Assembly (NCBI RefSeq): GCF_001194135.2
Contig: NC_068990.1
Coordinates: 83,814,629 to 83,849,954, forward strand
From: Octopus bimaculoides
Lineage: Eukaryota
Reading direction: 5' to 3'
DNA length: 35,326 nt
The first letter of the stretch is position 1; every line of letters begins with the position of its first letter. Of the stretch, positions 11,142 to 35,170 are shown piece by piece. Under the pieces are notes generated by a model. That model was not told the origin of the DNA. It ran no database searches and saw only the letters and a program-made list of their open reading frames with translations. The position numbers were made by a program, and so were the translations under genes.

Positions 11142-11221
11142 TTACAGTCTTGTATTCATTTTGTCCCCATTTGAACTGGTAACCTTTGAACTCACTGCTC
11201 CACTACTAGAATCTGAATTAT
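11142..11221 (-). CDS. aGPCR terminal exon (NSDSSSGAVSSKVTSSNGDKMNTRL*)
   Basis: Strong acceptor tcttttccgtttttcag|AT, phase 1, TAA at 11144-11142; Ser-rich tail followed by AT-rich UTR-like sequence. Confidence 0.75.
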
Positions 11222-11455: not shown

Positions 11456-11517
<62 letters not shown>

Positions 11518-14500
11518 TGTATGTTTGTGTGTCTGTGTTTGTCCCCTAGCATTGCTTGACAGCCGATGCTGGTGTGTTTAATGTCCCCGTCACTTAGCAG
11601 TTCGGCAAAAATGACTGATAGAATAAGTACTAGGCTTACAAAGAATAAGTCCTGGGGTCGATTTGCTCGACTAAAGGCGGTGCTCCAGCATGGCCGCAGT
11701 CAAATGACTGAAACAAGTAAAAGAGTAAAGAGTTGCATAATGTAACTTCGAATACAGCTTTTCCATGCATCACTGCCTTGTTTCCATATGGTAAAGGAAC
11801 CGGAGCTATGATTTTGACTGCTTATCATTAGATACACCTTATTGCATTCAAATCCTTTGTTTATCTGATAAATATAGCAAAATTAATATAAATCTATCAC
11901 AAAGAGAAAATTATTTTTGGGAAAAGATAATGTCTCAAAAAATCAATTGAATATGATTGTCATCTTGTTTAGCACTTCAGCCGTCAGATTACTTTGTCAA
12001 ATGTAAAGTTTATTTATCCAAATTATTTTCAATTAATCATTTATCATTTTGTGGCTTTGAAACATTGATGATGTATTTGTTTATATTTTGAATGACATTG
12101 TAAGACAGGTGTGAAAGGCTAAATCTGAGCACTCTGAACATAAAACAGGAAGACGGCCATGTATAGGTCTGGCTGTGTCTGCCACAAGTGCTTTCCACCA
12201 CACAGGAAGTGCGGCGTAGACAATGCAATGGAGTGCAGTGGCGGAGACCGTGCAGGGAAGCCGACTCCCATTGGCTGAAGGCATGACTGCCCACGAGCAC
12301 GAACAAGGTTGCTCGCTGCTGTGGTGATGGCCAGAAAGGTGTCTGGGAAGCGGAGTCTGACACCAATGCTACAGCCTTGTATCAGTCTGCTGCTTTGCAC
12401 GGTGACATGCAAAGCAAGGCATTCTCTCTTTGAGTGAAGAGTAGATTATATAACAGGTACATATAAATGTTTCGTGGTAACGAAAGTGGTGTAAGATAAT
12501 GACCATCAAAATGGAGCACCACATCAAGTACGGAGGTTCTTTTACTGTTACTTGTTTCAGTCACTTGACTGTGGCCATGCTAGAGAACAGCCTTAAAGGA
12601 TTCATTCAAAGAAATTGAACCCAGGACTTATTCTTTGTAAGCCTAGTACTTATTCTATCTGTCTCTTTTGCTGAACCACTAAGTTACAGGTATGTAAGCA
12701 CACCAACATCGGTTATCAAGCGCGATGGTGGTGGGGTAAAACACAGACACACACATAATTATGTACATAGATACATGACAGGCTTCTTTCAGTTTCCGTC
12801 AACAAAGTTCATTCACAAGGCTTTCGTTGGCCTGAGGCTATAGTCGAAGACATTTGCCCAAGATGCAATGCAGTGGGACTGAACCTGGAACCATGTGGTT
12901 GGGAAGCAAGCTTCTGACCACACAAAAAAATTATATGCCTTGCATATAATTAGAAATAAAAAAGGAGAAGACATATAGAGTGTGTTAAAGAAAGTGAGAG
13001 TGAGAAATAAAGAGAGTGATAGATACAATACAAAGCAATAATTAACTTACAAAAGTTTTGTTTGGCTAACATCTTTCCTTCAGATGAATCTTGAGTATCT
13101 AACGAGGGAACAGACATAAAAGAAGTTATCAGTTTTGTGGTATTGACGCAGGAAACAAAATTTACGATATTGATGTTGGATAAATGAGTTACTGCAAACA
13201 TATGTATGCATGCATGCATGCATGTATGTATGTATTTCTGTATGTATGCGTGTATGTATGTATGTTGAGATAAAGGATAATATTGATGAGAAAGACGGTA
13301 GCAACAGCAGTGAAAGATTACAAGCATTATGACAGTGGCAATGGTGGTGGTGGTGGTGGTGGTGGTGGTGGTGGTGGGTTTTGGGTGTTTNNNNNNNNNN
13401 NNNNNNNNNNNNNNNNNNNNNNNNNNNNNNNNNNNNNNNNNNNNNNNNNNNNNNNNNNNNNNNNNNNNNNNNNNNNNNNNNNNNNNNNNNNNNNNNNNNN
13501 NNNNNNNNNNNNNNNNNNNNNNNNNNNNNNNNNNNNNNNNNNNNNNNNNNNNNNNNNNNNNNGGTGGTGGTGGTGGTGGTGGTGGTGGTGGTGGGTCTGT
13601 GGTAACTATGTGGTGCTATAAAAAATATTCACCTACTTGTTTTATATTTGGTGTTACTCTTCGAATCTTCTTTCTTTTGTATGCATAAATACATGCAGAT
13701 GACATCTCTAGCATCTTTCTTGTATAGACAGTAGAATATGAAGATAAACAATCCTTGAAGCGTATTGAAGATAGCAAAGAGGTATTTAAACACCAAAGCT
13801 GCCTCACCAAATGTGAAGAATGCTAATATCCAAGAGAGGCCAAGTAGGAAAAACACGCCAACGATTCCAAAAAGCCGTAATTTCCTTGCTTTGTGTTCAA
13901 ATTTCTTGTCATTTTTCATTGAAATAAGGCGCCCAAGAATGAGAGAAAATATGGTAAGATTGAAGAGGAGAACAGCCACCACTGGAAACAGGAAAGCAGC
14001 ATAGAAAGATGTCTGGGATAACCAACAACTAGAAAGAAATGGGAAAACAATTAAAAACAAAATCTAGAACATGTTTTTTTCAGGAGAGTTGAGTGATTAC
14101 AATGATGAAGTGTATTCAATCCCAAAGAATTTATGATTAAATCCTGATACTGGAAATGGGAATAAACAAGTAAGTATCCAAGCAACACAGCATCCATGAC
14201 TTTTGTAAACATTTTCTCAAGCTCAGAATTGCTTAAGCATGGAATAAACTACCTGCTTCAAGTTGTTAGCTGTCGAGACACTACATCTTTCAAAACTTCC
14301 ATGCTTCCCTGCAGATGAAATGGCCTTGACCTTCTTTGGAGCATATGAGGAGGAGTATTTCCACTGGATGGATTGTCTCTTTTTCTCTGGCTCAAAGTAA
14401 TGAAGCCAACACTCATCTTGGGTTAGGAAACCAGCTGCATCTGTCTCAAACAAGGTCAGATTTTCTTGTGATGCAATCAGCTGATGTGGCACCCTCTAAG

Positions 14501-15197
14501 CAGAAGCTTTCATCAAGCCAAGTTCATTGTGCAGAGTATTCTCAACTCTCTCACAGGATAATGCTAAGAGCATTGGCTATTTGATTTACAATAAATCACC
14601 TGTCACCATTACCATATGGTGAACACAATCAATGTTTTCCTCGGTGATGACAGTTGAAAGACATCCAAATTTTGGTTCTTCTTCAAGACTCTCCCTTCCC
14701 CTCCTAAATCCAACCACCTACTTCTGTACTGCTGATAAAGCTGGACTGTCATCCCCTTAAGTAGCAAGCATATATGAACAAATCTCTTTGGGGGCTAAGC
14801 CATTTTTCTGCAGATACTTGATAAGACTATGATGCCAAATTTTCTCCAATTTCAAGAGAAATCACTGCAAATTACTTTTGAAGTCAGATGTCAGTTAAAC
14901 AAGAAAGAAACAATGCAATTATCAATAACAAGAGTTGAAATTAATGTATGCAAGATTCTTCAGCTCTAGCATCACTCCTTCATAGTCAGCCTATGGACTT
15001 TCCAGCCCACCCTCAATGAAAGTATGTGAAGATGGGTTGTAGCTAATTGTTTGTGAGCTTGTGTTGTATTTTTGTATATGTTGCAACAATATTATTGAAA
15101 GAAGAAATTTCAAATATACTTACACCTCTGCAATTCTGATGTAGTTATTTGTGTTGTTGATAATCAGAGTAAGGATGACTATTATTGCTGGAAGACC

Positions 15198-15243: not shown

Positions 15244-18200
15244 TATAATAATAATAATTAGTAATTGACGCTCTTAGAAGTGTAGGAAAATGTGATTTGC
15301 ATTTGCTGGGTGCTTCACAAGTCCATACATAGTTCATGGAAGGAAAAAGGTTAAATGAGTACAAGTGCCAGAACCGGTAGAAGGTTTAAGAGAAGATTTT
15401 ATTGATAAGTAAACATGTATGTCTGTGTGTGTGAGTGCGACATGTAAACATAATAATAGACAAGCCTTCATGTAAACAAAGTGTGTGTGTATGCAAACAT
15501 GGATGTGTGCGTGTGCGATAAGTAGAGAGCATAGAAAAGAGTCTATAATGAAGTTAGAAGAATGTCCAGACTCAAGGATGATAAAATACCAGTTTGTATT
15601 CAAGGTACACGGTGATTGAGGTGCTGTAACAAGAAGTTGATGCGCCATTCATTTGATGTGCCATTTACTATCATAATAAAACTGTCGGCATTTTTAACGA
15701 ATGGCTTATGCTAGTGTATAAAACTATATAAAACTGGTTTAGAAAATAAAAACAGCAAGCAACCAGAAGACTGAGCTTCATATGACATATAACCATACGC
15801 ACGCGTGTACACTTATCTTGAGTTGCCTCCCCTAGTTGCCAGACCGCTAAAAAGTGTTGATTGATCTCCCTTGGTCTACTAAATTGATGTGCTACAGTTA
15901 TTGCGTACATGAATATTGTTAGTTTTGTCAATGAATGCTCTACAGAATAATCTCTCATTGTTTTAATAATAATCCTTTCTTTATGCTTGACGAAATAATA
16001 TAAAGGAGAATCTACTATAATTGGCAGAAGAAATGCTGCTAGTTTACGGAGATAAGTACTGCTTGTTTAGATAGTGGTATGTATGTTGAGGAAGATCACT
16101 AATGTTGATCTCTAAAAATCTGTTAGCTTCTAAAGTAAAAATAATAACTCTTAAAGAGACAGAATGACTGTGTTTTATGTAGAAAAAAAGCAGTTAATAT
16201 CGATGAAGAAATAACTGTAAAATTATGCAGGGTTGTGGGGCTACGATTAACCAATTCTTTAATCTGATCACGGTGTCCTGTTATCGATGGGAGGAAATTC
16301 TACCTGTTTTTGCAGATTAATTGTTCAATGCTCCCAGAAAAAATACCTCAACACTAATTCAGCTGTTGTTTTTATATGGCTGGTGTCTCTTGATCACTCT
16401 GATTATTTTATTTTCTAAAATATTTCTACAGATATTGATTCTCCTTCAATACGTGGAGCAACAGATGTGTTTCGATTGAACCGTTCGAGTGTTTAAATAG
16501 AGATAAAAGAAGCTACTTAAAGTGACACAAAATGATCACAAATAGACGGTGTTTATACATACCCCAAGCAATTACTGTACTCTTCAGCATGTAGTGGCTC
16601 ATGTATTTATTGAATACAACAACCACAGCTAAATAGATATGAGACGCTTCAACAGCCATCCACATGATGGAAACCGTAAGGAAGTAGTGTAGTAGAGCTG
16701 CTACTGCCTATAATAATAATAATAATAACAACAACAACAACAACAACAACAACAATAATAATTATCACAATAATGATATGTACATAACAGCAAATTGGGT
16801 CATTGGGTTCCTCATAAACTTTCTGTGTCTAATTGTGTGCAGGATGTGAATGTGCATTGTTTGTTTTTGATTTTGTCAACTATACAGTATAGTAGGGTCA
16901 GTTGGGCGGGCACTGTCCATGAGAAAATCAACACCATGACGCAATAGACTATGCCAGAAATTTAGAAACGACATGCTGTACTGCTTGGCATTCACACCAG
17001 AATCTCCAATATGAACATTTCAGAGTGTTTTGGTGTGAATCTGAGGACATGTATCGAGAGTGATAAAAACCAAACATCCAGTCAACATCATGGTATTTGG
17101 AGTGATCAGTAGTGATGGTGACGTTATGCCTCCAATCATCTTCTCATATGGTCTAAGACTCAACACGAAGGCCTACATCAAGTGCCTGGAGGAGGTAATG
17201 CTGCCCTGGGTCAAGAGGGTGGCTGCTGGAACACCCTACGTCTGGCAACAGGACTCTGCACCATGCCACAGAAGTATTTTCAAGATATTTCAAGATATCT
17301 TCAAGTAATTTTGGTAAATATATCTGTTAAAATGAGATGTCAGTGTTATTTTTATTTTTATGTAATTCAGATGACAATATATTCACCTGGTGTGCCCTTG
17401 GCAGTTGGGGGTGACCAAGATGTGTGGGGTGCCTGGTTGGCTCTGAGTGGAACTCCCTTCTATAATTATCTGACAGGGTTTCAACAAGTGGAACAACACT
17501 TGATCAGCTAAGAGAGTAACACACATGTCCATGCATGCATGTGCATGTGTACATGTTGTATTTGTGTGTATGTGTGTGTGTCATCGTCATCATCATCATC
17601 ATCATTTAACATCTACTATCCATGCTGGAATGGATTGGACTGTTTGACTGAAAACTGGTAAGTCGGAGAGCTGCACCAGGTTCTGATCTGATTTGGGAAG
17701 GTTTCTATAGCTGGATGCCCTTCCTAATGACAACGACTCTGAGAGTGTAGTGGATGCTTTTTATGTGCCACCGGCACTGGTGCCATTAATCTGACACTGG
17801 TATCAGCCTGTTATGGTCTCACATGTCCACACAAGCAAGGTTCGTAAAGAATAATATATTTGTATGTGTGCACTCACTTTACAAGCAATCATATTCTTCG
17901 TAGCATATGGACGCATCCCAACAAGAAATATGAAATTTGCTACAGCCAAAGCAATGCAAAGATTTATTAAAATTTTTGAAAAAAGTCCTTTTCGTAAAGT
18001 TCTGAAAAAAATGGAAAAGCAATGTTTGTTTTACTGAAACATGAAACTTAACATATGAAATACAGTAATAACTACAATTTTGGATAAGAATGGTGTTTGT
18101 TAGGAAATATAAATATCTTTAAGTTATACATGAAATGTATTTGTATGTAGTAAGTAGTTTGTTTACCAACCACATGGTTCCAGGTTCAGTTCCACTGCAT

Positions 18201-18319: not shown

Positions 18320-19795
18320 GATATATGTGTGTATGTATATGTATGTGTGTCTGTCTCCCCCACCATTGCTTGACAACTGATGTTGGTGGATTTACATCCC
18401 CGTAACTTTGCGGTTCGGCAAAAGACCCAAATAGAATAAATACTAGGCTCACAAAGAACAAGTCCTGGGGTCGATTTGTTTGACTAAAGGTGGTGCTCCA
18501 ACATGGCATATCAAGACATGTCATATGTGATGATAGCAGATGTAGGGAGAGAGATGGGCCCTTCCAGGTCTAAAAATGTCTAAAAATATCAAGATGTGCC
18601 ATATGTGATGATAGCAGATGTAGGGAGAGAGATTGGGCCCTGCCAGGTCTAAAAATGTCCAAAATTATAAAGACATGTCATATGTGATGATAGCAGATAT
18701 GGGAAGAGAGATTGGGCCTTGCCAGGTCTAAAAATGTCCAAAAATATCAAGACATGCCATGTGATGATAGCACCCTTACAGCAGTATCAGGGCATTAAGG
18801 GTTAATGAGATAGCTTATTATAATTTTTTTTTTTGTTTCCTTCAAGAGAAGTTCAACCTCGGACAGGAAGTCAATTACTTCCATATCATTTCCTCACTTT
18901 TATCATTGCTTCCACTTGTGATTTACTGATTTTACATAACTGAAATTGTATACATTACATGCATGTGTGTGTATATATATATATATATGAATATATTTAA
19001 GCGTGTAAACATGTATGTATGCACATGTATGTGTGGTAAGTGTGGGCATATACATATATAAATTTGGGTGTGTGCTTTTAGGCCAAAGTTATTTGTAAAA
19101 TTTTAGTTGTTTCATGGTGAAGTAAACATCATAGAACAAAGCAACTGTTTAAAAATAATAATTCTGAATTAAAATGCTTACTTGGAAGAAACATGAACTA
19201 TAATTGTGAGTATGAGACAGACAATCGAAATTCCACATCCAATGCTAGATATAATAGATATTGATTTAACATCAACATCCTTTTCATTTCCATAAACATC
19301 CTGCAATAGAAACAAGCAACATAATAACTTCTTTTCTATATTTAAATGTTTGTCAATCTTATATAAACCACTAGTGCCTTACTTGATAATGGTAGGGTTG
19401 CTCTGTGTGTGTATGTGTTTGTATATGTATGTATGTATATGATGTTTTTCAAATAACTTGCACATGCAAGTGCTACCAGTTGAGAACTCGGCATACTGGA
19501 AGCCAACAAATGTATGGGGTCATCAGGAGAGAATGATGCCTACCTCTCAATGGCATCAATGCATACCGGCCCCACTGACTGATATGAGGCCCTGCTTAGA
19601 ACTGGTTATCAAATAAAGATCAATATGTATATGTTAGGAAGGGCATCCAGCTGTAGAAACTCTGCCAAATTAGATTGGAGCCTGGTGTTGCCATCCGGTT
19701 TCACCAGTCTTCAGTCAAATCGTCCAACCCATGCTAGCATGGAAAGCGGACGTTAAACGATGATGATGATGATGATGATATATATGTATGCATGA

Positions 19796-22800: not shown

Positions 22801-24717
22801 TGTAAGCATATCAATTGTTTTTGTTGTGGATACTGCTGTTGTATATCTTCTGTTTTAGGTTTATGAGAAGTGTGATGGTTTAGCCTACTGGCCTGAATTC
22901 ATGTTCTAGAAAGAAGTTATAGATGTAGATGAGCACAGTATAACTTTAGGCTCTTACTGTTTCAGATATATGCTGGGTAGTATAATAGCAGGACATTTTT
23001 GATGTGATCCATGTTTGACTGAAGTATACAAATATTTGTTTAGAGAGAAGTGTTTGGTAGAAGGAACATGTCCATTATTTTTATTTTAAGTTTTGTTGGT
23101 AGAAAAGAAAAAAAATATCAATAACTCAATTACTACTTAAAGCTCTGCAAGTAACCTATCTAGAAATTAGCTGCCATAAAGTAGGTTCAACAAACCATGA
23201 ATTTGTTGGACTATCGTGATATGAGATTAGGTATCTATTGATCAAGCAGACTCAAACAGCTGAAGTATAATTCTTGGTGGTGGCAGACTGGCAGAATTGT
23301 TAGAGCATCAGACAAAATGATTTGCAGAACATCTAACTCTCTACATTCTGGTTTCAAATCCTACTGAGGTCATCTTCGATTTTCATTCATCCAAGGTCCA
23401 TAATATTGAGTACCAGGGAAGCAGCAGGATCAATGGTGTCTCCTACCAAAACTCCCAGCATTGTGCAATTATTCATGGGATAGTGACTCTTTTTCTGTCG
23501 GGAGATGATATTCGGCTGGGCATTATTTTACGTCTATACAAGGCAGCAAACTAGCAGAATCCTTAGCATGCCAGACAAAAGGTTTAATGGTAATTCATCT
23601 GTCTTTACATTCTGAATTTAAATGTTGTGAGGTTGACTTTACCTTTCATTCTTTCAGGGTTGATGAAATAAGTACCAGTTGTGCTTTGGGGTTGAAGTAA
23701 TTGACTAACTCCCTCCCACAAAATTTCAGGCCTTGAGTCTATAATAGAAAGGATTATTTTACTCCTATAGGCACCGATCTACTCTCTTATAAGGTATTAT
23801 AATGGTTCTAAATCTTGTAACATGTTAGGTTTACTGGATCTATTCAATTTGATGGTATAATAACTTTAACACGAAATAACTTCTAAAATACAAATTTTTG
23901 TCCAAAACGTTACGAGTAAACCCTGTTATCTGTGACACATTCTACTAGTATCCGAAGTTTCAAAGCGTTTAGTTAAAAAAAATTAAGTAAAACATCTGGC
24001 CGTCAAATTGAATAGATCCCTGGATTTTCCGGCGTGTATTGGTTATTTACAAGTCAGACAAACGGGGGGGCGGGGTAATCCATCTCATGAAAGGGTTGTC
24101 TTCCCTTTAGAAGATTTATCTCCCCTGAGATTGTTCTGTGACAAATGGCTGTCGGTTTGTATAGCTCCCAAGAAGAATGTGCATGCAAAACAGAAAGAGA
24201 AGGAAGAAATAAAAAAGAAAAGAAGAGAGTGTGTAGAGGAAAAGGAATGCAGGAAATATAGAGAAAGAAGAGTAATGAAGCAAAATATAAAATAAACAAA
24301 ATAAAGAAAAGTAATACAAAGAGGTCAGGACCAAGGTAGAAATCCTGCAGAATAACACAAGAGAGTTGTTAATTAATATACAGTATATATAACAGATGAT
24401 TCAGTTGTGTTAATGGTTGGCTGTTAATACTTGGGTCAATACTTGGTTGTTAAACATTGTACATACCCTATATAGCTTATCAGTCCGAAGAGAATGGAAT
24501 GAAACCCTTGAAATCCTTAGAAGTTCTTTGCTTTTCAGACGTTTTAATAAACTGTTAGGTAATGAGATGAAGTCCATCACCATCATATTTTCTAGTTCAG
24601 AATATGAAGCATTATATATCTGGTGGGAGGAAAGAAAAAAAAGAAAGGCATTGAAAAGTTATATGGGATACAACAAGAAAAATGGTAAACTTTCTACCAC
24701 TGCTGTTGCTATTGCTG

Positions 24718-27446: not shown

Positions 27447-28323
27447 ATTACTACTATTATGTTTGTATTACCCATTAGCACTCTGGTTTGACTCTTGTGC
27501 AATAACCAATACGTCTTCTGGAGCATCGATCATGTTATTCACGCTTTGAAGTATATTATTCGTTGTTATATTAGTAGATATATCGGGTATCAACGGCATC
27601 ATTTTTTCTAAAATGTCTGTAGACAACACAACATCGATTTCTTGGAAATATTTAGCATTCTTCGAGATACCTAGAAGTTTTTGTGAGTTTTTCTCAATAT
27701 TATCTGCAAAAAGAAAAAAAGAGAGAAAACATATTAAGTTAATATGCATAATATTTCTGTTAATTTTGAATGCTCTAATAAAAGTACAACACATGTAGGT
27801 GCAGGCATGATTATAAGCAAGCGCATAGATGAGTGGTAAGGAGCTTGCTTCTCAACCATATGGTTCTGGATTCAGCCAGATAGGTTGTAGTAGTCACTCA
27901 GTGTATAAAAAAATGTATTGTGCTGCGACTACTACTACTACCTCGCAAGCCATGACAGACAGAAAAGATGTGCTCGAAGCCAAGAATTTGAGTTTACGGA
28001 GACGATATTTATACATCACCTGAGGAAACACAACGAGATCGATCTCATAATGCAGGGAAACGGTTACATAACCAAATACCTGCGAGCCTGGAGAACTTCG
28101 TTGCATGGAAACAATTGTAGTGATTACAAATAAAGGTCCAACTGTACTCCTTTTTGTTGACTCTAACTTATTCAATTGTCCATTCGGACACTAAGAAAGC
28201 CCCAATGCAAACCTGGCAGTACATATAATACTACTACTGGATAGCACAGGGTGAAAACTGAAGGTGAACGAGCTTATACTATACTCTACTATGTTCTTAA
28301 CAGGAAATAACCTATGTGTATAA

Positions 28324-28797: not shown

Positions 28798-31700
28798 GTG
28801 TTTGTGGTTGTCCCCCTACCATCGCTTGGCAACCAATGTTGGTGTGTTTAAGTTCCCATGACTTAACAGTTCAGCAACCAAGACCATGGCTTCTTTCAGT
28901 TTCCGTCTACCAAATCCACTCACAAGGCTTTGGTCAGCCCGAGGCTATAGTAGAAGACACTTGCCCAGGGTGCCACGCGGTGGGATTGAACCTGGAACCA
29001 TGTGGTTCATAAGCAAGCTACTTACCGAGACTTTAAATCTCAGACAGGCTTTGATCTGGATCGTATATTATACACTCTGTTCTACAGTAACAACAGCAAT
29101 TAGGTCTACTATCACCTGAACCAATTAATTGTTGCTCACTTACTTTCATCAAAATCAGAGCTGCTGATATTCTGCAATGCTTGTGTAATCCAATCCATAT
29201 CATAACAATGGGACAGATCTGGGTCTTCCCACATACTGGCACCAAAACGTGGGAAAGGATTTTCTTGAAAAAGGTTATTTGGAAACTCATTTTCTCTTGT
29301 GATACTGGAAAACAAAATTAAAATATTCTGATTACTTTAGTCCAAGATGGACAGTTTCAAACATAGACAGTATTTGACATCATAATGCTTCTTGTGATAA
29401 ACTGCTACTTATTATCAATTGATAAAACAGTAGTTGAGCTTTCATAACTGCTCAACCAGCAAGAAATAATGGCAAAATTTCTTTCAGATCACACACATCC
29501 ATCTTGAAAAAGATGACATTTTGATAATTACTCTATGTAACCATATATCAGAGAAGGGATGATGAATAGATGTGTGTCACACAGGCCTGCTGGTGTCTGG
29601 AAATGGCTTGGTATCATGTGAAGCACACTCACTGCATACGAGTTAAGTTGGTTTTCTACCTCAAGTGTATGCTGAGGAAAAGAGAAGACTCGCAAAGCAA
29701 ACAGTAAATGAAATGGTAGAAGGCCATGGCACAATAACAGTAGTTTGACAGAACTTGCTGAACATTTCATTTCAAGCGGCTGCAATTTTGAAGAAGACTT
29801 GAAAGTGCATATTCTCAGAAAAGTTTAGACAGCTCCTACCTCTGTTGGGTAACTAAGGGTCTCTCCCTCAGAGTGAAAGGCAGATTATATGATACCTGTG
29901 TGTGAACAGCCATGCTACACGGCAGTGAAACATTGGTGTGACTGCTGAGGACATGCATAGGCTTGAGCGAAATGAAGCTAGTATGCTTCGCTGGATGTCG
30001 ATGTCAACGTGCCTATATGACAGAGTGTATGCATCTTGAAAGAAAAGTTGGGCATAAAATGCATCAGATGTGGTGTGCAAGAGAGACGACTGTGCTGGTA
30101 TGATCATGTGATGTGTATAGATGACAACAGCTGTGTAAAAAAAGTGCCGATCCCAAATTGTGGAGGGAACCAGTGGAAGAGGTAGACCCAGGAAAACATG
30201 GGACAAAGTGGTGAAACATGATCTTTGAATGTTGGACTTCACGGTGGCAGCGGCAAGTGACTGAGACTTTTGGCAATATGCCAAGCTTGAGAAGATTCAT
30301 CAAACCAATTGAAATCGTAGTTGTGGTTGATGCCGGTGTCACACATAACTGACATATGTGCTAGTGGCACATAAAGAGCACCTATCACACTCTTGGAGCG
30401 ATTGGTGTTATGAAGAGCAACCTGCTGTAGAAATTATGCCAAATCAGACTGGAAACTATACCAAATCAGACTGCAGCTCTCCAGCTTGTCCAAGAAGTAA
30501 AGCTTCCTTCAAGGCAGAGCTAAAAATGCAATTGTCAAGTGAGTAAGAGGTTTTAAACAGGAACGAAATATTCAAAATTGGTAAAACTAAAAATTGTCGA
30601 GGATAAATTAAATTTATCATTGTTACTGAATATGTTAGTGTTATTTAATTTCTGAACGGTTTCGCTGCCGTTTGTTTATGTAGTTTGATTTCTTTATCCT
30701 TCAATTTCTACTAAGATAGAGACGCGAGTAAAATTTAAAATAGAGAAACGAAAATAAAACTTTGGAAACAGCAGCGTGCTTTTGAGGGAGATAATCAGAG
30801 AAAAACTTGAAAGTCTGTAAGATCGTAATACTTCATGTAAAGTAAATATAACAAGTAATCCAGAATCCTTGTTTGGAACTGGATCGATACCAAAATCTAA
30901 TCAACTCATGCCCATCATGAGGCCAAGCAGCCCTGAAAGTTTCATCCGAATCCATCCAGAGGAACTAGAGATATTTTGTCCACGGACAAACGAACAAACA
31001 AACAAACACAACTGAAAACAATACCTCCGCCTTCGCCAAGGCGGAGATAATAAAAGTATATGCAGCGTAAGATGTAAAATTCCAGTTTAAGTAATGTGAA
31101 CTTAGGAACATTAATTATATCACTTTAATCTTGTTCTGTATTTTATTTTCCTATACTATAAAAATATGAAACTGATGGTTTTAAGAAAATTCAGAAGTAA
31201 AACAATAGAAACAAACCATTTTCTTGTTGCCTCAGCATCATTTTCATGACATGGGAGCCTCACAGTAGTTCTACCACTTGTTGTTGGCCAATGAAACGAA
31301 CCTTTTTTACTCGATGTTGTTTCTTCATTGCAAAGCACTTGAAAATATAACATGGATATGGTATATGTATTAAAGCAAGCATGGACATTGTGTAGGTATT
31401 ACAAATTACAGATACACATTTTACATACATGAAATATACAGCTGTGATGTAATATATTACGATATACATGAACATGACTTATATGCTAACTAGAAGAAAA
31501 GTGGACATGGTATTTAATATTGTGAATATTTTTGAAACAACATATATAATATTTACATATTAGATGGCACAGGGATATGTTTCATGTGCTAAAAACAGAA
31601 ATTCTTACTACATTAAGAAAGACTATGATAGCTTTCATATGTTAGAAAATAGCGAAATATCATCTGCATGTTATAAAATATATTTGATTCATAATTTACA

Positions 31701-32390: not shown

Positions 32391-34406
32391 CGATGACGAT
32401 AGCAAAGGTGATAACAAATACATATGACTGCTTACCTGCACTAGTTAATTTCATGGTGTCTCGTTCAATGTCTAGGTGATCCATAGTTTTTGATGAATTC
32501 AGTATGTTGTAAATATTATACCAGACTTCTACTTCAGAGATATGTATTAGAACTGTGCAGTAGATACTTATATATGCTGTTACTCGGGGATGTCTTTGAG
32601 GAGAGAAAATTTTTTTTTTTAAATATTAGAATATTAAAAAAGGTGTTTATTAACAGCTTAGAAAGGAAAGAGTCTTTGCTATGTGCAGCACATATCTAGT
32701 TTGAAGAAACATTTATTTGGTATTAATAGCAAAAATTGTAAAAGTAATTATGAAATGCTTCGTGTAAGTATCAACCATTTTGTAAACTAATTGTGGTCGC
32801 CTATAAAAACTTAAATTTTTGCAAATATGAGATGGAAAAATAACATGAAACAAGTCTGTTTTTCTGTAAAACAATTAGATTAGTGTGCTACATGGTTCAA
32901 TCACTCTGATATTCTGTATCATCAAATTTAGTTTTATATCCTCCCAAGCCGAAGTAATCAAAGCTCGCAGCAGCAACAACAATAACAGCAGCAACAGCAA
33001 CACTCATCATCATCGTCGTTTAACGTCTGCTTTCCATGCTGGCATGGGTTGGACGGTTTGACTGAGGGCTGGTAAACCAGAAGGCTGTACCAGGCTCCGA
33101 TCCGATCTGGCAAGTTTCTGTAGCTGGATGCCCTTCCTAACGCCAACCACTCTGAGAGTGTAGTGGGTGCTTTTTATATGTCACCAGCAGGGGTGCCAGT
33201 TACAAAACTCTAGTCTCAGCCATGACTACAATCTCACTTGGCTTGACAGGCTTCCTCAAGCTCAGTATATTGCTAAAGGCCTCGGTCCCTTGTCACTGCC
33301 TCCGCGAGGCCCAACATTTGAAGGGTGCCATGTATACAACACTGGCATCTGCCATGACTATGATTTCACTTGGCTTGACAAGTCTTCTCAAGCACAGCAT
33401 ATCACCCAATGTGCCACTGGCACAAGTGACAGTTACGCTGGGTCAGCGGTACAGATGTAGGCGGCTACAGAAATATCTTTTAATCATACAAGTTTAGTTT
33501 GGTTAAAATTAATAAGTGTTCACAACTCACCTGAAATATCTTACTTTAACAATGTAGGTCCCATGCAATTTTGAAAATTCCTCTTCTAGCTGTAAATAAA
33601 AGCATTAAAAAAATTGCAACAAAAAAAAAAGAACGAATTTTACTTCACAGCCAATTATCTAATAAGAAATTATTTATAGCAATAAATTATTTTGCACCTC
33701 TGACCTATATACTGTGGAACATCAACAAACTTCTCAGTTTCCGTTCCTTTCCCTGTTAAGTATATCAATCCTTCAGCTTCTCTGCTGGCTTCCTGGTACA
33801 TTTCTCTGCTGTCCATTTTCTTTCAGTATTATGAAGTCTCTTCTCTTAATTATATTGCTCTATCTAACTCAGTGTTTCACAACAATGCCACCTTTACTCT
33901 GGCTGGAACACTGGACCAGTAATTGACTTGGTTTGTAGCTTTCAGTCGCTTGTCTTATTGGAACTTCTATTTTACCTCTATGCTGTAAATCTGAATCTCA
34001 TCATCATACATTTTAACAAGTATTTTTCTTAATTTTTGACTACTCAATAAATCTTGAAACTTCTATGTCTTCCTTTTTCAAATTGGTTTCTACTTCAGAG
34101 TCCACCTAGCTCGAACAACCTACCTACGTTAGGTTGTATATTCCTCACCAGAGAAGGGCTTCTCAGGAAGAATGAAATCTATCTGGTTTGTATGTTCTTC
34201 AGATTAAAAAGTGATCAGGTGGCTGACTGGTTTCCTAGGGATAATGTTGTAGATGACAAAGTCATTAACGTCACAGAATTCCAGCAACTTTGTTTCCTTC
34301 TTGATCTTTGAACCAAGGTCAAAGCCTCGGTTCTCTCCCACAGAATCCACTAGAGTGATGCACAACATCTCCATTTAGATCACAAGTTAGAATGAAAATA
34401 TAAGAC

Positions 34407-34475: not shown

Positions 34476-35170
34476 ATGGAAAAAGCTGACAACCATGTCT
34501 AGGCTCTCTTGCTCATATTGCATGGTGCAGAGTCCTGTTGCACATCCTCCCCCCGGGCACTTGATGTAGGCATCCATGTTGAGTCTGAGACCATTTGGAA
34601 ATGGAGGCATAACGTCACCATCACTAGTGATCACTCCAAACTCCATGATGTTGACTGGATGTTTGATTTTTATCACTCTCGTTACATATCCCCAGATTGA
34701 CATTGAAACATTCTGAAATGTTCATGCTGGAGCTTCCGACGTGAATGCCAAGTAGTATCGCATGTCATTTCCAAATTTTTGGCTGAGTGAATTGCATCAT
34801 GGTGCAGTCTTTCTCAAAGAGAGTGCCCCACTGACCCTACTATACTGTGTAGTCAACAAAATTATGAGCAAAAATGTGCGTGCACAAAATAAAAAATATA
34901 AAATGGTGACAATCTACCCATCACACCCTGTATGTGTGTGTGTATATATATGTGTGCGCGTGCTTCTGCACGCGCATGTGTGAATATATATATATATGTG
35001 TGTGTGTGCATATGCGTACATTAATTGAGTTTTAGAAAAACAGTTACTCACAATCCTCGATATGTTTTTAGCCAAGTCATGGTATTCTTTTGATCTCGTA
35101 TTTACGAGGTCCTTAGAAAAGTCTTTACTCACTGTAAACGTCAGGTTAAACAGAAATGAATGCGTCCAAC
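11142..35170 (-). CDS. Adhesion G protein-coupled receptor (class B2), SEA-HormR-GAIN/GPS-7TM, ADGRG6/GPR126-like architecture; 5'-partial, 17 coding exons
   Basis: Manual join (minus): 35052-35170, 33531-33589, 32436-32593, 31217-31337, 29144-29304, 27472-27703, 26610-26781, 24467-24619, 22053-22193, 21143-21292, 19182-19300, 17878-18001, 16563-16707, 15124-15196, 13637-14028, 13051-13098, 11142-11221. All introns GT..AG, all phases match, 2447 nt, no internal stop. Motifs: GPS CVYWD..WSTKGC..CSCNHLTSFALLM; TM3 LLHYFLTVSIMWMAVEA; TM7 FAIFNTLQGLFIFIFYC; about 10 N-X-S/T sequons in extracellular parts. Confidence 0.93.
11290..11732 (+). mobile_element. tRNA-head SINE (family A), near full length with internal (TA)n(TG)n
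   Basis: Head GGAGTGGCTGTGTGGTAAG..GGTTCAGTCCC (A/B-box-like), CTTGGGCAAGTG core, tail AAGAATAAGTCCTGGGGTCGATTTG..CAAGTAAAAGAG; repeated elsewhere in window. Confidence 0.9.
12540..12923 (-). mobile_element. SINE family A, inverted copy
   Basis: RC of tail (cttgtttcagtc..ccaggacttattctttgtaagcctagtac) and head (gcccaag..gggactgaacctggaaccatgtgg). Confidence 0.9.
13051..13098 (-). CDS. aGPCR exon 16: 48-nt tail exon (TQDSSEGKMLAKQNF)
   Basis: Acceptor gttccctcgttag|AT, donor TTTT|gtaagt, symmetric phase 1 to 1. No homology support, so it could be optional or spurious. Confidence 0.6.
13637..14028 (-). CDS. aGPCR exon 15: ECL2 Cys, TM5-TM7, helix 8 (CWLSQTSFYAAFLFPV...FYCLYKKDARD...KYKT)
   Basis: Acceptor ccatttctttctag|T, donor ACAA|gtaggt, 392 nt, phase 2 to 1; ORF 13629..14060. 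LLGLSW and FNTLQGLFIFIFYC motifs. Confidence 0.95.
14190..14900 (-). mobile_element. Decayed mariner-family transposase fragment
   Basis: FLTQDECWLHYFEPEKKRQSIQWKY...PKKVKAISSAGK (first catalytic D region), plus upstream HTH-like YLQKNGLAPKEI..GFRRGRESLEEEP with stops. Confidence 0.88.
15124..15196 (-). CDS. aGPCR exon 14: TM4-ECL2 (G-LPAIIVILTLIINNTNNYIRIAE-V)
   Basis: Acceptor attattag|GT, donor GAGGT|gtaagt, 73 nt, phase 1 to 2. Completes WGLP. Confidence 0.92.
16563..16707 (-). CDS. aGPCR exon 13: TM3-ICL2-TM4 start (AVAALLHYFLTVSIMWMAVEASHIYLAVVVVFNKYMSHYMLKSTVIAW)
   Basis: Acceptor attattatag|GCA, donor TGGG|gtatgt, phase 0 to 1. LHYF...WM..EA..Y motif. Confidence 0.95.
16860..17290 (+). 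mobile_element. Internally deleted Tc1/mariner-superfamily (maT-like) transposon, copy 1
   Basis: KTKHPVNIMVFGVISSDGDVMPP..LRLNTKAYIKCLEEVMLPW..YVWQQDSAPCH. Confidence 0.88.
17581..17810 (-). mobile_element. RTE-type LINE 3' tail
   Basis: RC of GTTAGGAAGGGCATCCAGCT..AACCCATGCCAGCATGG..AAACGATGATGAT tail. Confidence 0.8.
17878..18001 (-). CDS. aGPCR exon 12: ICL1-TM2-ECL1 (TLRKGLFSKILINLCIALAVANFIFLVGMRPYATKNMIACK)
   Basis: Acceptor ccattttttttcag|A, donor AAA|gtgagt, phase 2 to 0. KILINLC TM2 motif and ECL1 Cys. Confidence 0.94.
18152..18507 (+). mobile_element. SINE family A, 3'-clipped
   Basis: Same head, core and tail blocks; ends at ctccaacatggc where the 79-bp array begins. Confidence 0.88.
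18509..18771 (+). repeat. 78-79-bp tandem repeat, ~3.3 copies
   Basis: aagacatg-type starts at 18513, 18591, 18670, 18749. Confidence 0.95.
19182..19300 (-). CDS. aGPCR exon 11: Stachel end and TM1 (DVYGNEKDVDVKSISIISSIGCGISIVCLILTIIVHVSS)
   Basis: Acceptor tttctattgcag|GAT, donor CCAA|gtaagc, phase 0 to 2. IGCGIS TM1 motif. Confidence 0.94.
19633..19778 (+). mobile_element. RTE-type LINE 3' tail ending in (GAT)n
   Basis: gttaggaagggcatccagctgtagaaac..ccaacccatgctagcatggaaagcggacgttaaacgatgatgat. Confidence 0.82.
20563..20707 (+). repeat. 145-bp direct duplication, copy A (copy B at 26359-26503)
   Basis: ttgtggctactagagtagg...ctacatgaagacaat; 2 mismatches seen between copies. Confidence 0.95.
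20927..21110 (-). mobile_element. SINE family B, decayed
   Basis: RC of the GGTTGACTTTATCTTTCATTCTTTCAGGGTCGATAGAATAAGCAC block seen at 23540-23757. Confidence 0.7.
21143..21292 (-). CDS. aGPCR exon 10: GPS motif (NGTNPRCVYWDDTSGQDPHWSTKGCNIYNIVPGERISCSCNHLTSFALLM)
   Basis: Acceptor tttgttttcag|AAT, donor ATG|gttggt, 150 nt. Canonical GPS cysteines and tryptophans and the H-L/T autoproteolysis triad. Confidence 0.96.
21618..21945 (+). mobile_element. Mariner 5' end (TIR remnant and N-terminal HTH)
   Basis: tatgaggtgatatcaaaagttcccggact TIR-like start; ANMKFCVKLGKSATETLSMLQQAY. Confidence 0.82.
22053..22193 (-). CDS. aGPCR exon 9: GAIN B (VIQKPLKKKMEVLEQFVNSQIIAANIPNIQITNLDKPITVSFSLIHK)
   Basis: Acceptor ctcattttatag|GTA, donor AAG|gtaata, 141 nt, phase 0 to 0. 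NSxII-A..I.NL..P-I-x-V-x-F GAIN motif. Confidence 0.9.
23280..23757 (+). mobile_element. Two tandem decayed SINE family B copies (~23280-23460 and ~23540-23757)
   Basis: Shared ggcagaatt/ccttagcat..agacaaaa head and gaggt(c/t)gacttt..ctttcat..agtacca core. Confidence 0.7.
23833..24022. mobile_element. MITE with ~20-bp TIRs (probably Tc1/mariner-derived)
   Basis: GGATCTATTCAATTTGATGG (23836-23855) and CCGTCAAATTGAATAGATCC (24000-24019), 1 mismatch; TSD degraded. Confidence 0.75.
24467..24619 (-). CDS. aGPCR exon 8: GAIN subdomain B (IYNASYSELENMMVMDFISLPNSLLKRLKSKELLRISRVSFHSLRTDKLYR)
   Basis: Acceptor tctttcctcccaccag|ATA, donor AGG|gtatgt, 153 nt, phase 0 to 0. I-x-LP-x-SL motif. Confidence 0.9.
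24715..24783. repeat. (CTA)n microsatellite
   Basis: Near-perfect triplet run. Confidence 0.95.
26359..26503 (+). repeat. 145-bp direct duplication, copy B
   Basis: Matches 20563-20707. Confidence 0.95.
26610..26781 (-). CDS. aGPCR exon 7: GAIN (MLAVIERIPNEV...KNGTKKINT)
   Basis: Acceptor atatttttcacag|A, donor ACG|gtacaa, phase 2 to 0; inside ORF 26550..26825. Confidence 0.88.
26861..27278 (+). mobile_element. SINE family A, near full length
   Basis: Highly similar to 11290-11732 throughout. Confidence 0.9.
27320..27460. repeat. Compound (CTA)/(CTG)/(CCA) microsatellite next to the exon 6 donor
   Basis: Direct reading. Confidence 0.9.
27472..27703 (-). CDS. aGPCR exon 6: GAIN subdomain A helices (NIEKNSQKLLGISK...QESNQSAN)
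   Basis: Acceptor tttctttttgcag|AT, donor AATGG|gtaata, 232 nt, phase 1 to 2; inside ORF 27468..27794. Confidence 0.88.
28795..29027. mobile_element. SINE family A chimera: plus-strand tail piece (28795-28878) fused to minus-strand head (28889-29027)
   Basis: gttgtccccctaccatcgcttggcaacc.. followed by cttctttcagtttccgtctaccaaatcc..caagctacttacc. Confidence 0.8.
29144..29304 (-). CDS. aGPCR exon 5: HormR C-part and GAIN start (ITRENEFPNNLFQENPFPRFGASMWEDPDLSHCYDMDWITQALQNISSSDFDE)
   Basis: Acceptor tttgttttccag|T, donor GAAA|gtaagt, phase 2 to 1. W-x-x-P-D-x-S-x-C motif. Confidence 0.9.
29810..30480 (+). mobile_element. RTE-clade LINE, ORF2 C-terminal region plus 3' UTR remnant
   Basis: FRQLLPLL..KGLSLRVKGRLYDTCV*TAMLHGSET..AEDMHRLERNEASMLRWM, followed by tail motifs. 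Confidence 0.88.
30860..31050 (+). mobile_element. Helentron/HINE (DINE-1-like) non-autonomous element end
   Basis: aaagtttcatccgaatcc core, (CAAA)n microsatellite, then aaaacaatac and hairpin CTCCGCCTT-cgcc-AAGGCGGAG (31025-31046). Confidence 0.6.
31217..31337 (-). CDS. aGPCR exon 4: hormone-receptor (HormR) domain N-part (VLCNEETTSSKKGSFHWPTTSGRTTVRLPCHENDAEATRK-C)
   Basis: Acceptor atattttcaag|TG, donor AAATG|gtttgt, phase 1 to 2. C..G.F.WP.T..G....LPC..A.R.C HormR signature. Confidence 0.9.
32436..32593 (-). CDS. aGPCR exon 3: SEA C-half (HPRVTAYISIYCTVLIHISEVEVWYNIYNILNSSKTMDHLDIERDTMKLTSA)
   Basis: Acceptor ttttctctcctcaaag|A, donor GCAG|gtaagc, 158 nt open, phase 2 to 1, bridging exons 2 and 4 exactly. 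Confidence 0.8.
33005..33430 (-). mobile_element. RTE-type LINE 3' tail
   Basis: Same tail motifs as 17581-17810 and 19633-19778, with additional upstream UTR sequence. Confidence 0.82.
33531..33589 (-). CDS. aGPCR exon 2: SEA middle (LEEEFSKLHGTYIVKVRYF-R)
   Basis: Acceptor tttatttacag|CTA, donor TTCAG|gtgagt, 59 nt, phase 0 to 2. Confidence 0.82.
33715..34360 (-). mobile_element. RTE-type LINE endonuclease-region fragment
   Basis: Minus translation KLLEFCDVNDFVIYNIIPRKPVSHLITF*SEEHTNQIDFIL, then EMYQEASREAEGLIYL. Confidence 0.75.
34408..34474. repeat. (TAG)n microsatellite
   Basis: Perfect triplet run. Confidence 0.95.
34480..34931 (-). mobile_element. Internally deleted Tc1/mariner-superfamily (maT-like) transposon, copy 2, retaining a terminus
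   Basis: IKIKHPVNIMEFGVITSDGDVMPPFPNGLRLNMDAYIKC; terminus TA-CAGGGTGTGATGGG at 34931. Confidence 0.88.
35052..35170 (-). CDS. aGPCR exon 1 in window: SEA-like domain N-half (WTHSFLFNLTFTVSKDFSKDLVNTRSKEYHDLAKNISRI)
   Basis: Acceptor ttttccgcgagcag|G, donor ATT|gtgagt, phase 1 to 0. F-x-L-x-F...F-x-x-D-L-x-N-x-x-S-x-E-Y-x-x-L pattern typical of SEA domains. Confidence 0.85.

What the first reader, a model, noticed from the sequence alone, without database searches (positions are those of the whole stretch)
11142..35170. Largely hidden 17-exon SEA-HormR-GAIN adhesion GPCR
Only a few exons show in the ORF track, but a phase-consistent ~815-aa product can be assembled. SEA directly followed by HormR, GAIN and 7TM matches the membrane-proximal order established for vertebrate ADGRG6/GPR126, a mechanosensing receptor. 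The Stachel TSFALLMDV and TM motifs are ADGRG-like, but the ectodomain is very divergent. Inference: a member of a lineage-specific, probably cephalopod, aGPCR expansion and a candidate mechano- or matrix sensor. Orthology is not established and the upstream domains lie outside the window.
Basis: partly seen in the sequence, partly recalled or inferred. Interest (0 to 1): 0.72.

Follow-up and report, generated by a model that had tools for sequence, protein, structure and literature searches.

The report
Unannotated octopus-type adhesion GPCR gene
The minus strand carries an apparently intact, many-exon gene for an adhesion G-protein-coupled receptor (SEA, hormone-receptor-like, GAIN/GPS and seven-helix domains) that belongs to an already described octopus-specific expansion of ADGRG-like receptors, so it is a real but fairly ordinary new family member.

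Summary
On the minus strand, 35170 to 11142, I rebuilt a phase-consistent gene fragment. It has 16 exons (not 17), all introns are GT-AG, and it encodes 798 aa (not about 815) ending in TAA at 11144-11142. The 5' end lies outside the window.

All four N gaps in the finding lie inside introns. No exon contains an N, and homologue residues run on without loss across each gap.

7tm_2 (E 7e-41) and GPS (E 6.5e-14, HL|TSFALLM) are certain. HormR+GAIN align to the zebrafish Gpr126 ectodomain 6V55 (E 6.6e-12). SEA is moderately supported: a marginal Pfam pass, SEA topology in a paralogue model, and 6V55 as top fold hit.

It is not an ADGRG6 orthologue. It sits on a deep branch within a monophyletic Octopus clade (best identity 47%), and that clade groups with vertebrate ADGRG2/G4/G6 together. 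Paralogues carry LRR N-termini rather than CUB-PTX.

The octopus-specific adhesion-GPCR expansion is published (Ritschard 2019). The likely mechanism, inferred by homology, is GAIN autoproteolysis followed by tethered-agonist activation. Verdict: a new member of a known kind, of modest interest.

The parts
35052..35170 (-). Exon A (first exon inside the window; phase-1 acceptor): first third of the SEA domain, WTHSF...NISRI
   Evidence: Acceptor gcag|GT and donor ATT|gtgagt. The raw frame hits Pfam SEA at 32.1 bits. The equivalent exon of the P0004 gene has the same boundaries.
33531..33589 (-). Exon B: middle of SEA, LEEEFSKLHGTYIVKVRYF(R)
   Evidence: Weak family-HMM hit. Strong acceptor ttatttacag| and donor CAG|gtgagt. 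A paralogue exon at the same position and phase is found in L002 at 11628-11678.
32436..32593 (-). Exon C: last third of SEA, HPRVTAYISIYCTVL...KLTSA
   Evidence: tblastn with paralogues. Family HMM E 1.3e-10. Phases match L002.
31217..31337 (-). Exon D: HormR first half (C114, W128, C141, R150)
   Evidence: tblastn. Family-invariant Cys/Trp columns. Aligns to the 6V55 HormR.
29144..29304 (-). Exon E: HormR second half (C152 formed across the splice junction, W177, C185) plus linker
   Evidence: The TG|T junction makes the conserved Cys. Aligns to 6V55.
27472..27703 (-). Exon F: GAIN subdomain A helices
   Evidence: tblastn E 1e-15 to 1e-17. Aligns to the 6V55 GAIN. Weak Pfam GAIN hit, E 0.023.
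26610..26781 (-). Exon G: GAIN A/B
   Evidence: tblastn. Aligns to ADGRG2 and 6V55.
24467..24619 (-). Exon H: GAIN B
   Evidence: The donor AGG|gtatgt is identical in position to paralogue L001.
22053..22193 (-). Exon I: GAIN B (VIQK...SLIHK)
   Evidence: The acceptor tatag|GTAATTCAA is identical in position to L001.
21143..21292 (-). Exon J: GPS motif with four Cys, cleavage site HL|T and start of the tethered agonist (TSFALLM)
   Evidence: Pfam GPS E 1.8e-15 and 6.5e-14.
19182..19300 (-). Exon K: end of Stachel (DVYGNEK) and TM1
   Evidence: tblastn, hydropathy, Pfam 7tm_2.
17878..18001 (-). Exon L: TM2 and the ECL1 Cys
   Evidence: Donor AAA|gtgagt. Alignment.
16563..16707 (-). Exon M: TM3 (LHYFL...WM..EA..IYL)
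   Evidence: Pfam 7tm_2 E 2.7e-7 on the raw frame.
15124..15196 (-). Exon N: TM4
   Evidence: tblastn, 60-80% identity. Hydropathy.
13637..14028 (-). Exon O: ECL2 CWL, TM5-TM7 and the proximal tail. If not spliced at 13637, the frame reads on to TGA at 13631-13629.
   Evidence: Pfam 7tm_2 E 3.9e-14. tblastn E 1e-47.
11142..11221 (-). Exon P (probable): Ser-rich C-terminal tail NNSDSSSGAVSSKVTSSNGDKMNTRL plus TAA
   Evidence: Strong acceptor ccgtttttcag|. A phase-1 intron and a small terminal exon are conserved in paralogues L001 and L002. AATAAA lies 69 nt downstream. The tail itself has no significant similarity to anything.

Best explanation
The window holds the 3' 16 exons of an apparently intact gene for an adhesion (class B2) GPCR. 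It belongs to the octopus-specific 'ADGRG6-like' expansion and is not present among annotated proteins.

The encoded part runs from outside to membrane as follows: a non-cleaving SEA-like domain, a four-cysteine HormR domain, a GAIN domain with a canonical GPS (HL|T), the tethered agonist TSFALLMDV, an ADGRG-type 7TM and a short Ser-rich tail.

Likely mechanism, inferred from homology and not shown here: the GAIN domain cuts itself at HL|T during maturation, and the N-terminal fragment stays non-covalently attached. Binding or pulling on the distal adhesion modules then exposes the Stachel. By analogy with paralogues those modules are LRR plus a Cys-rich module, encoded upstream of the window. 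The exposed Stachel inserts into the 7TM pocket and activates a G protein, as solved for ADGRG2, G4 and G6.
For: - Gene model: 16 exons, all GT-AG, phase-consistent, with no stop, frameshift or N in any exon. Junction positions and phases are shared with two gap-free paralogue loci.
- Domains: Pfam 7tm_2 7.1e-41, GPS 6.5e-14, and the SEA segment at 27.3 bits against a 26.4 cut-off.
- PDB sequences: ADGRG2 6.4e-72, ADGRG6 8.3e-64, and 6V55 covering HormR+GAIN at 6.6e-12. The SEA segment aligns to the ADGRF1 SEA at 1.5e-3.
- Family conservation: C114, W128, C141, R150, C152, W177 and C185 are nearly invariant. Pfam HRM passes its threshold in relatives P0018 and P0028 at the homologous position.
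- Fold: the AF2 model of paralogue P0004 shows beta-alpha-beta-beta-alpha-beta, then a small beta module, helical GAIN-A, beta GAIN-B and the 7TM. Its top Foldseek hit is 6V55 at 2e-21 over 545 columns, against about 390 for HormR+GAIN-only structures. The 7TM gives TM-score 0.8-0.85 to ADGRG2, G4 and G6.
- Motifs: seven hydrophobic helices, four GPS Cys, HL|T and nine N-glycosylation sequons in the ectodomain.
- Family placement: the top 25 hits are all Octopus at 47% identity or less. The NJ tree nests the protein in the Octopus clade. The expansion is published.
Against: - There is no expression or splice-junction evidence, so a recently inactivated copy cannot be excluded.
- The N-terminus (signal peptide and distal domains) is outside the window, so completeness is unknown.
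- SEA support by sequence is marginal.
- Pfam HRM and GAIN do not hit the window protein.
- Terminal exon P rests on gene-structure analogy only, and donor 13637 (CAA|GTAGGT) is mediocre.
- Autoproteolysis, Stachel agonism and G-protein coupling are inferred, not tested.
- The NJ tree has no bootstrap support.
Confidence: 0.85

Rival explanations
1. It is the one-to-one orthologue of vertebrate ADGRG6/GPR126, with the same function.
For: NCBI names the paralogues 'ADGRG6-like'. The SEA-HormR-GAIN order and the four-Cys HormR pattern resemble Gpr126.
Against: The NJ tree puts the whole Octopus clade, together with other mollusc sequences, beside vertebrate G2+G4+G6 jointly, which is a many-to-many relation. 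By sequence score the 7TM is nearer ADGRG2 than G6. Paralogues carry LRR and a Cys-rich module upstream, not CUB-PTX. Dozens of Octopus paralogues exist.
Confidence: 0.03
2. It is an unexpressed or decaying duplicate (a young pseudogene) of the expansion, which would explain why no annotated protein matches it.
For: There is no exact or close (>60% overall) match among 5.8 billion proteins, including three annotated Octopus genomes. The introns are loaded with SINE-like, transposase-like and simple repeats. The terminal donor is weak.
Against: All 16 exons are open, with canonical splice sites and conserved phases. Every family-invariant Cys and Trp, the HL|T site and the TM motifs are kept. 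Its SEA segment is closer to the Pfam consensus than those of annotated paralogues. The lack of a match may simply mean that the source genome is unannotated or absent from the database.
Confidence: 0.1
3. The model is a scaffolding chimera: exons on opposite sides of one or more N gaps belong to different tandem paralogues.
For: Four gaps interrupt the gene. The family is reported to form tandem clusters (PMC6408891). A 145-bp segment is 98.6% identical between introns J/K and G/H, near gaps.
Against: Exon order, orientation, phases and residue continuity are exactly those of the gap-free paralogue loci. Identity to paralogues follows a smooth domain gradient, with no block matching one paralogue much better than the others. 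The gap flanks are microsatellites, which are typical of unresolved simple repeats.
Confidence: 0.04

Closest known systems
Octopus-specific adhesion-GPCR expansion ('group 3' of Ritschard et al. 2019, PMC6408891; NCBI 'adhesion G-protein coupled receptor G6-like' of O. sinensis, O. bimaculoides and O. vulgaris, e.g. P0001-P0011)
   Same: The exon-intron structure has the same positions and phases. The domain order downstream of the Cys-rich module is the same. The GPS HL|TSFA(L/I)LM, the 7TM motifs and the Ser-rich tail on its own terminal exon are shared. The window protein nests inside this clade.
   Different: Identity to the nearest member is only 44-47% overall (about 35% in SEA/HormR and about 62% in the 7TM), with no one-to-one partner. 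Its SEA segment reaches the Pfam threshold whereas the paralogues' do not. It lacks one Cys that the paralogues have in the HormR loop. Whether it has LRRs upstream is unknown.
Vertebrate ADGRG6/GPR126 (zebrafish ectodomain structure 6V55; Leon et al. 2020, PMC6954182)
   Same: The membrane-proximal order is SEA-HormR-GAIN-7TM. HormR+GAIN align by sequence (E 6.6e-12). It is the top structural match of the paralogue model. The HormR has the same four-Cys pattern. The SEA lacks the GS autoproteolysis motif, as in Gpr126.
   Different: It is not an orthologue. There is no evidence of CUB-PTX, and paralogues have LRR plus a Cys-rich module instead. It has no (R/K)-X-K-R furin site, only the minimal R-x-x-R motifs RYFR and RHPR at residues 56-62, whose location relative to the beta2-beta3 loop was not determined.
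Vertebrate ADGRG2/GPR64 and ADGRG4/GPR112 (7WUI, 7XKE, 7WUJ)
   Same: ADGRG2 is the best sequence match for GAIN-B plus 7TM (E 6.4e-72). The paralogue 7TM superposes with TM-score 0.8-0.85 at 36-38% identity. The Stachel type, T-S-F-(G/A)-x-L-(L/M)-D, is the same.
   Different: Those receptors have no SEA-HormR pair. Their ectodomains are mucin-like (G2) or PTX-containing (G4); this statement is from general knowledge and was not tested here.
ADGRF1/GPR110 SEA domain (7WXU, 8HC0)
   Same: It is the only solved structure that the window's SEA segment finds by sequence (E 1.5e-3). The alignment runs through F..F..DL.N..S..Y and the FR-xx-xVxxY strand.
   Different: ADGRF1 has the GS(I/V)V autoproteolysis motif; the window has HPRV at that place, so no SEA autoproteolysis is expected. 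The 7TM is much more distant (E 1.3e-35).

Membership tests
Adhesion GPCR (class B2) | Secretin-type 7TM (Pfam 7tm_2) with seven helices | tested here: met
   7tm_2 E 7.1e-41, residues 501-737. Seven hydropathy peaks. All top PDB hits are aGPCRs.
Adhesion GPCR (class B2) | GPS motif directly before TM1, with conserved Cys/Trp and the H-L-S/T site | tested here: met
   GPS E 6.5e-14, residues 443-487. The sequence is C445...W458...C463...C476-x-C478-N-H-L|T.
Adhesion GPCR (class B2) | GAIN domain fold (helical subdomain A plus beta-sandwich subdomain B) | tested here: inconclusive
   Pfam GAIN gives no significant hit for the window protein. However, residues about 206-490 align to the GAIN of 6V55 and ADGRG2, and the paralogue model has the fold at pLDDT about 85-90, matching GAIN structures. 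The fold of the window protein itself could not be predicted.
Adhesion GPCR (class B2) | Actual autoproteolysis and tethered-agonist activation | not testable with these tools
   Only the motif HL|TSFALLMDV is shown. Cleavage and agonism need experiments.
ADGRG subfamily (group VIII), G2/G4/G6 cluster | The 7TM is closest to ADGRG members and groups with them in a tree | tested here: met
   PDB ranking is G2, G6, G4, G3, then L3, D1, E5, F1. In the NJ tree the mollusc clade sits beside vertebrate G2/G4/G6 (no bootstrap; only hits of this search were included).
ADGRG6/GPR126 orthologue | One-to-one phylogenetic relation to vertebrate ADGRG6 | tested here: not met
   The window protein nests in a large Octopus-only clade that is related to G2+G4+G6 jointly.
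ADGRG6/GPR126 orthologue | CUB-PTX at the N-terminus | not testable with these tools
   The upstream exons are outside the window. Paralogues have LRR_8 and a Cys-rich module instead.
SEA domain | Sequence match to the SEA profile | tested here: inconclusive
   The isolated segment scores 27.2-27.3 bits against a 26.4 cut-off, covering profile positions 2-92 of 106. In the full protein it scores 23.3 bits, below the cut-off. None of six paralogues hits. The family profile finds no SEA in the PDB. There is a weak match to the ADGRF1 SEA at 1.5e-3.
SEA domain | Ferredoxin-like beta-alpha-beta-beta-alpha-beta sandwich | tested here: met
   Met for paralogue P0004: strands 134-145, 178-187, 190-200 and 227-235, helices 148-172 and 205-224, pLDDT about 70-80. 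The top Foldseek hit, 6V55, extends about 150 columns beyond HormR+GAIN. This carries over to the window protein by colinear alignment and shared exon structure. It was not tested on the window protein itself.
SEA domain | G|S[VI]V autoproteolysis motif (present in only some SEA domains) | tested here: not met
   There is no GS[VI][VA] motif. HPRV lies at the aligned position. This is not required for membership; Gpr126 lacks it too.
HormR (HRM) domain | Conserved Cys/Trp framework and a match to HRM | tested here: inconclusive
   Pfam HRM gives no hit on the window segment. However, C114, W128, C141, R150, C152, W177 and C185 are nearly invariant in the family. The segment aligns to the HormR of 6V55. 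HRM passes its threshold in relatives P0018 (30.4 bits) and P0028 (33.2 bits) at the homologous place. The paralogue model matches the HormR+GAIN structures 4DLO and 8OEK.

The most novel reading that the evidence does not exclude
This locus is a deep-branching, so far unannotated member of the octopus ADGRG-like expansion that has kept the most canonical SEA sequence of the family. Together with the hemichordate and bivalve relatives, it would indicate that a SEA-HormR-GAIN-7TM core was already present in the bilaterian ancestor of ADGRG2/G4/G6. On that reading, lineages swapped only the distal adhesion modules (LRR plus a Cys-rich module in octopus, CUB-PTX in vertebrate G6), and octopuses then multiplied this core for peripheral sensing in suckers, skin and the axial nerve cord.
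Probability: 0.4. Interest if true: 0.45.

Novelty: new member of a known kind. Interest (0 to 1): 0.3.

Why it matters
The gene adds one more, apparently intact and rather divergent, receptor to an octopus-specific adhesion-GPCR expansion. That expansion has been linked by expression to the axial nerve cord, suckers and skin (PMC6408891).

Two points have some value. First, such genes can be missing from protein sets, so receptor counts for the expansion may be underestimates. Second, the membrane-proximal SEA-HormR-GAIN arrangement, first recognised structurally in vertebrate Gpr126 in 2020, seems to be shared by these molluscan receptors with different distal domains. That is useful for reconstructing how ADGRG ectodomains evolved, and for choosing constructs for cleavage and Stachel assays.

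It does not open a new mechanism or settle a long-standing question.

Tried and rejected
I used paralogue P0004 instead.
- A profile of SEA segments (window plus six paralogues) against PDB sequences gave no SEA hit; the best was an unrelated domain at E 0.037.
- hhalign of that profile against the amphioxus relative with a Pfam SEA domain (P0051) gave nothing.
- A longer exon H ending at 24431 or 24443, joined to a weak acceptor at 22148, was suggested by tblastn read-through and by my first alignment. I rejected it after the paralogue DNA showed the junction at DKLY(R/T)|VIQK.
- Frame 0 for the second HormR exon, picked automatically, was wrong. The correct frame gives the conserved Cys across the junction.
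- Ending the protein at TGA 13631-13629 (786 aa) was kept only as an alternative. Donor 13633 joined to the exon P acceptor also gives ...KTSR and then a stop (reasoning).
- Other candidates for exon B (33822-33751, 34374-34207) had no splice signals or homology.
- Pfam on the transposase-like intronic ORFs gave no hit; only the RT fragment at 6614-6940 was confirmed.
- No second family member or other gene was found elsewhere in the window.
- I could not identify the source species. No protein of the window is in the database, and repeats are shared with O. sinensis at only 75-87%.

Full report
**Layout and gaps.** The window is 35,326 bp at 37% GC, with seven N runs; four of them fall within the finding. 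The ORF list and a stop-to-stop scan of the minus strand showed recognisable receptor pieces in descending coordinates. These were a SEA-like piece near 35.1 kb, Cys/Trp-rich pieces near 31.3 and 29.2 kb, `CSCNHLTSFALLM` near 21.2 kb, and TM segments from 19.3 to 13.6 kb. Scanned as raw frames, before any model was built, they already hit Pfam: SEA at 32.1 bits, GPS at E 1.8e-15, and 7tm_2 at E 2.7e-7 and 3.9e-14.

**Gene model.** A search with a rough concatenation found 153 relatives. The top 25 are Octopus 'adhesion GPCR G6-like/G2-like' proteins, at no more than 47% identity, and no protein in the database is identical to one encoded by the window. tblastn with those proteins placed the exons. 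I then listed all in-frame acceptors and donors and chose phase-consistent pairs.

- Exon B. The small middle SEA exon was found from a weak family-HMM hit and from excellent splice signals: `ttatttacag|CTAGAAGAG ... TTTCAG|gtgagt`.
- H/I junction. Two of my early choices were corrected using paralogue DNA. The O. sinensis locus L001 shows the H/I junction at DKLY(T)|VIQK, matching the window's strong sites at 24467 and 22193.
- C-terminal tail. L001 encodes its last 16 residues on a separate phase-1 exon.
- SEA exons. The O. vulgaris locus L002 splits its SEA region into three exons with the same boundaries and phases as my exons A, B and C.

The final model has 16 exons, all introns GT-AG, and 798 codons plus the stop. 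Exon A starts with a phase-1 acceptor, so at least one exon lies beyond the window. P0004 has three exons upstream of the equivalent point.

**The N gaps.** The gaps lie in these introns: 28424-28766 in E/F, 24885-25824 in G/H, 19898-20313 in J/K and 13391-13562 in O/P. No exon contains N, so 'in frame across the gap' does not arise. Several observations support continuity:
- Homologue residue numbers run on without loss at E/F, G/H and J/K.
- The gap-free paralogue loci have no additional exon in these introns.
- Three gaps are flanked by microsatellites on at least one side: (GGT)n on both sides of 13391-13562, and TA-rich repeats beside 19898 and 28766.
- Each inter-gap block is about equally distant from a changing set of paralogues: 33-37% for A-E, about 50% for F-G, 55-61% for H-J and 60-63% for K-O. 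This argues against a join with a known paralogue.
A join between two unknown paralogues of the same genome cannot be strictly excluded.

**Domains: 7TM and GPS.** On the full model, 7tm_2 (E 7.1e-41) and GPS (E 6.5e-14) are unambiguous. Seven hydrophobic helices are present, together with the ECL1/ECL2 Cys pair, the CWL motif, `WM..EA..IYL` in TM3 and `FNTLQGLFIF` in TM7. The cleavage site is `C-S-C-N-H-L|T-S-F-A-L-L-M-D-V`.

**Domains: GAIN and HormR.** Pfam's GAIN and HRM models do not hit the window protein. Four other lines of evidence support these domains:
- Residues 125-449 align to HormR+GAIN of the zebrafish Gpr126 ectodomain 6V55 (E 6.6e-12), and residues 281-449 align to the ADGRG2 GAIN.
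- C114, W128, C141, R150, C152, W177 and C185 are invariant or nearly so across 36 relatives.
- HRM passes its Pfam threshold at the homologous place in P0018 and P0028.
- The four-Cys pattern `HWP...LPC...TRKC...W.DPD...C` mirrors that of Gpr126, `RWP...VPC...SRTC...W.LPD...C`.

**Domains: SEA.** The evidence is mixed, and I rate the domain as moderately supported.
- For: the isolated 111-aa segment scores 27.3 bits against a cut-off of 26.4, over profile positions 2-92 of 106. It also aligns to the ADGRF1 SEA (E 1.5e-3), with `FR-HP-RVTAY` opposite `FR-NG-SIVAGY`.
- Against: in the full protein the score is 23.3 bits; none of six paralogue segments hits SEA; a family profile finds no SEA among PDB sequences; and hhalign to an amphioxus SEA-bearing relative found nothing.

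**Fold test.** It is 45% identical and colinear with the window protein, and has the same exon structure. The model has mean pLDDT 71.5. It shows strand-helix-strand-strand-helix-strand over residues 134-235 (pLDDT about 70-80), which is the SEA topology described for Gpr126 (PMC6954182). This is followed by a small beta module, a helical GAIN-A at pLDDT about 90, a beta-sandwich GAIN-B and the 7TM.

Its best structural match in the PDB is 6V55, the full Gpr126 ectodomain (E 2e-21), over 545 alignment columns. HormR+GAIN-only structures give 388-392 columns (4DLO, 8OEK). The match therefore extends about one domain further towards the N-terminus. The 7TM superposes best on ADGRG2, G4 and G6, with TM-score 0.8-0.85 at 36-38% identity. 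The tool does not print residue ranges, so the SEA-to-SEA superposition is inferred from the alignment length rather than seen directly.

**Family placement.** The PDB sequence ranking is ADGRG2 (246 bits), G6 (220), G4 (184-193), G3, L3, D1, E5, F1. A neighbour-joining tree of GPS+7TM (53 sequences, 333 columns, no bootstrap) puts the window protein inside a monophyletic Octopus clade, on its own deep branch. That clade sits beside other mollusc 'G6-like' proteins, and then beside vertebrate G2+G4+G6 plus hemichordate sequences. The gene is thus ADGRG-like but not an ADGRG6 orthologue. Paralogues carry LRR_8 repeats and a Cys-rich module ending `CC..NLCNK.DF.G` immediately before the SEA exon, not CUB-PTX.

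Ritschard et al. 2019 already described an octopus-specific adhesion-GPCR expansion, with GPS, 7TM and LRR in some members, some genes co-localised on the same scaffolds, and expression in axial nerve cord, suckers and skin (PMC6408891). The window shares SINE-like and transposase-like repeats with the O. sinensis locus at 75-87% identity, which fits an octopod genome. I could not name the species.

**Mechanism.**
- Shown: the gene fragment is intact; the domain order holds; HL|T and a Stachel of ADGRG type are present; and there is no `GS[VI]V` motif in the SEA.
- Inferred from the solved ADGRG2, G4 and G6 complexes and from Gpr126 work: self-cleavage in the GAIN domain; a non-covalently held N-terminal fragment; Stachel exposure after ligand binding or force on the distal modules; and G-protein activation.
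- 'Mechano- or matrix sensor' is a reasonable guess by analogy. No evidence here bears on it.

**Rivals.** A true ADGRG6 orthologue is rejected by the tree and by the paralogue architecture. A silent young pseudogene cannot be excluded without transcripts, but nothing in the sequence suggests decay. A scaffolding chimera is unlikely for the reasons given under the N gaps.

**Verdict.** This is a new member of a known kind, and interest is modest (0.3).

Noticed in passing
window 2108-3019 and 8059-9044, with RT ORF at 6614-6940 (+) between them: Two arms of about 0.9 kb form an inverted repeat: 95% identity over 822 bp, plus 98.8% over 82 bp, interrupted by the N run 8141-8226. They flank about 5 kb that contains a reverse-transcriptase fragment (Pfam RVT_1, E 1.9e-12). 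This could be a retroelement with inverted terminal repeats, or an inverted duplication or assembly artefact.
   Followed up: partly
window 11296-11729, 12538-12928, 18146-18507, 26867-27273, 28888-29026: At least five copies of a SINE-like repeat of about 400 bp lie in both orientations in introns and downstream sequence, at 72-96% identity to each other. The same family occurs in the O. sinensis paralogue locus (L001 26304-26511) at about 82-87% identity.
   Followed up: partly
window 16850-17274 (+) and 34547-34951 (-): Two transposase-like remnants lie in introns L/M and A/B, with ORFs such as KHPVNIM.FGVI.SDGDVMPP. They are 81% identical to each other and 77-80% identical to L001 42531-43006. 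From memory they resemble mariner/Tc1 transposases, but Pfam gave no hit at E<0.01.
   Followed up: partly
window 20563-20707 and 26359-26503: A 145-bp segment is 98.6% identical between intron J/K and intron G/H, each copy lying a few hundred bases from an N gap. It may be a young repeat copy or a local assembly duplication.
   Followed up: no
window 9846-9950 (N run 9886-9910): The 25-N gap is flanked on both sides by the same sequence of about 35 bases (CAAGAACGAGGTGAATATTTCAGGCATCCTCAGAG). This looks like an unmerged overlap, so the gap may really have negative length.
   Followed up: no
window 13351-13390 and 13563-13605; also 19858-19897 and 28767-28800: The N gaps inside the gene are bordered by microsatellites: (GGT)n on both sides of 13391-13562, and TA/TATG repeats at the other two. 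The gaps are therefore most likely unresolved simple repeats.
   Followed up: partly
L002 3879-4070 (O. vulgaris paralogue P0004, residues 69-132); equivalent segments in P0001 and P0003-P0010: Paralogues have a Cys-rich module ending CC..NLCNK.DF.G on the exon immediately upstream of the first SEA exon. From memory, the CCxxxLCN ending is the signature of Ly6/uPAR three-finger domains. Pfam did not report it, and the model's pLDDT there is only 50-70. An LRR / three-finger-like / SEA / HormR / GAIN ectodomain would be an unusual combination for an adhesion GPCR.
   Followed up: no
window protein residues 56-62 (exon B/C junction, about 33540-32580): Two overlapping minimal R-x-x-R motifs (RYFR and RHPR) lie where ADGRF1 has its GS autoproteolysis site. 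Human GPR126 is cut by furin in the loop between beta-strands 2 and 3 of its SEA domain. They are not the (R/K)-X-K-R consensus, and their position relative to that loop was not determined.
   Followed up: no
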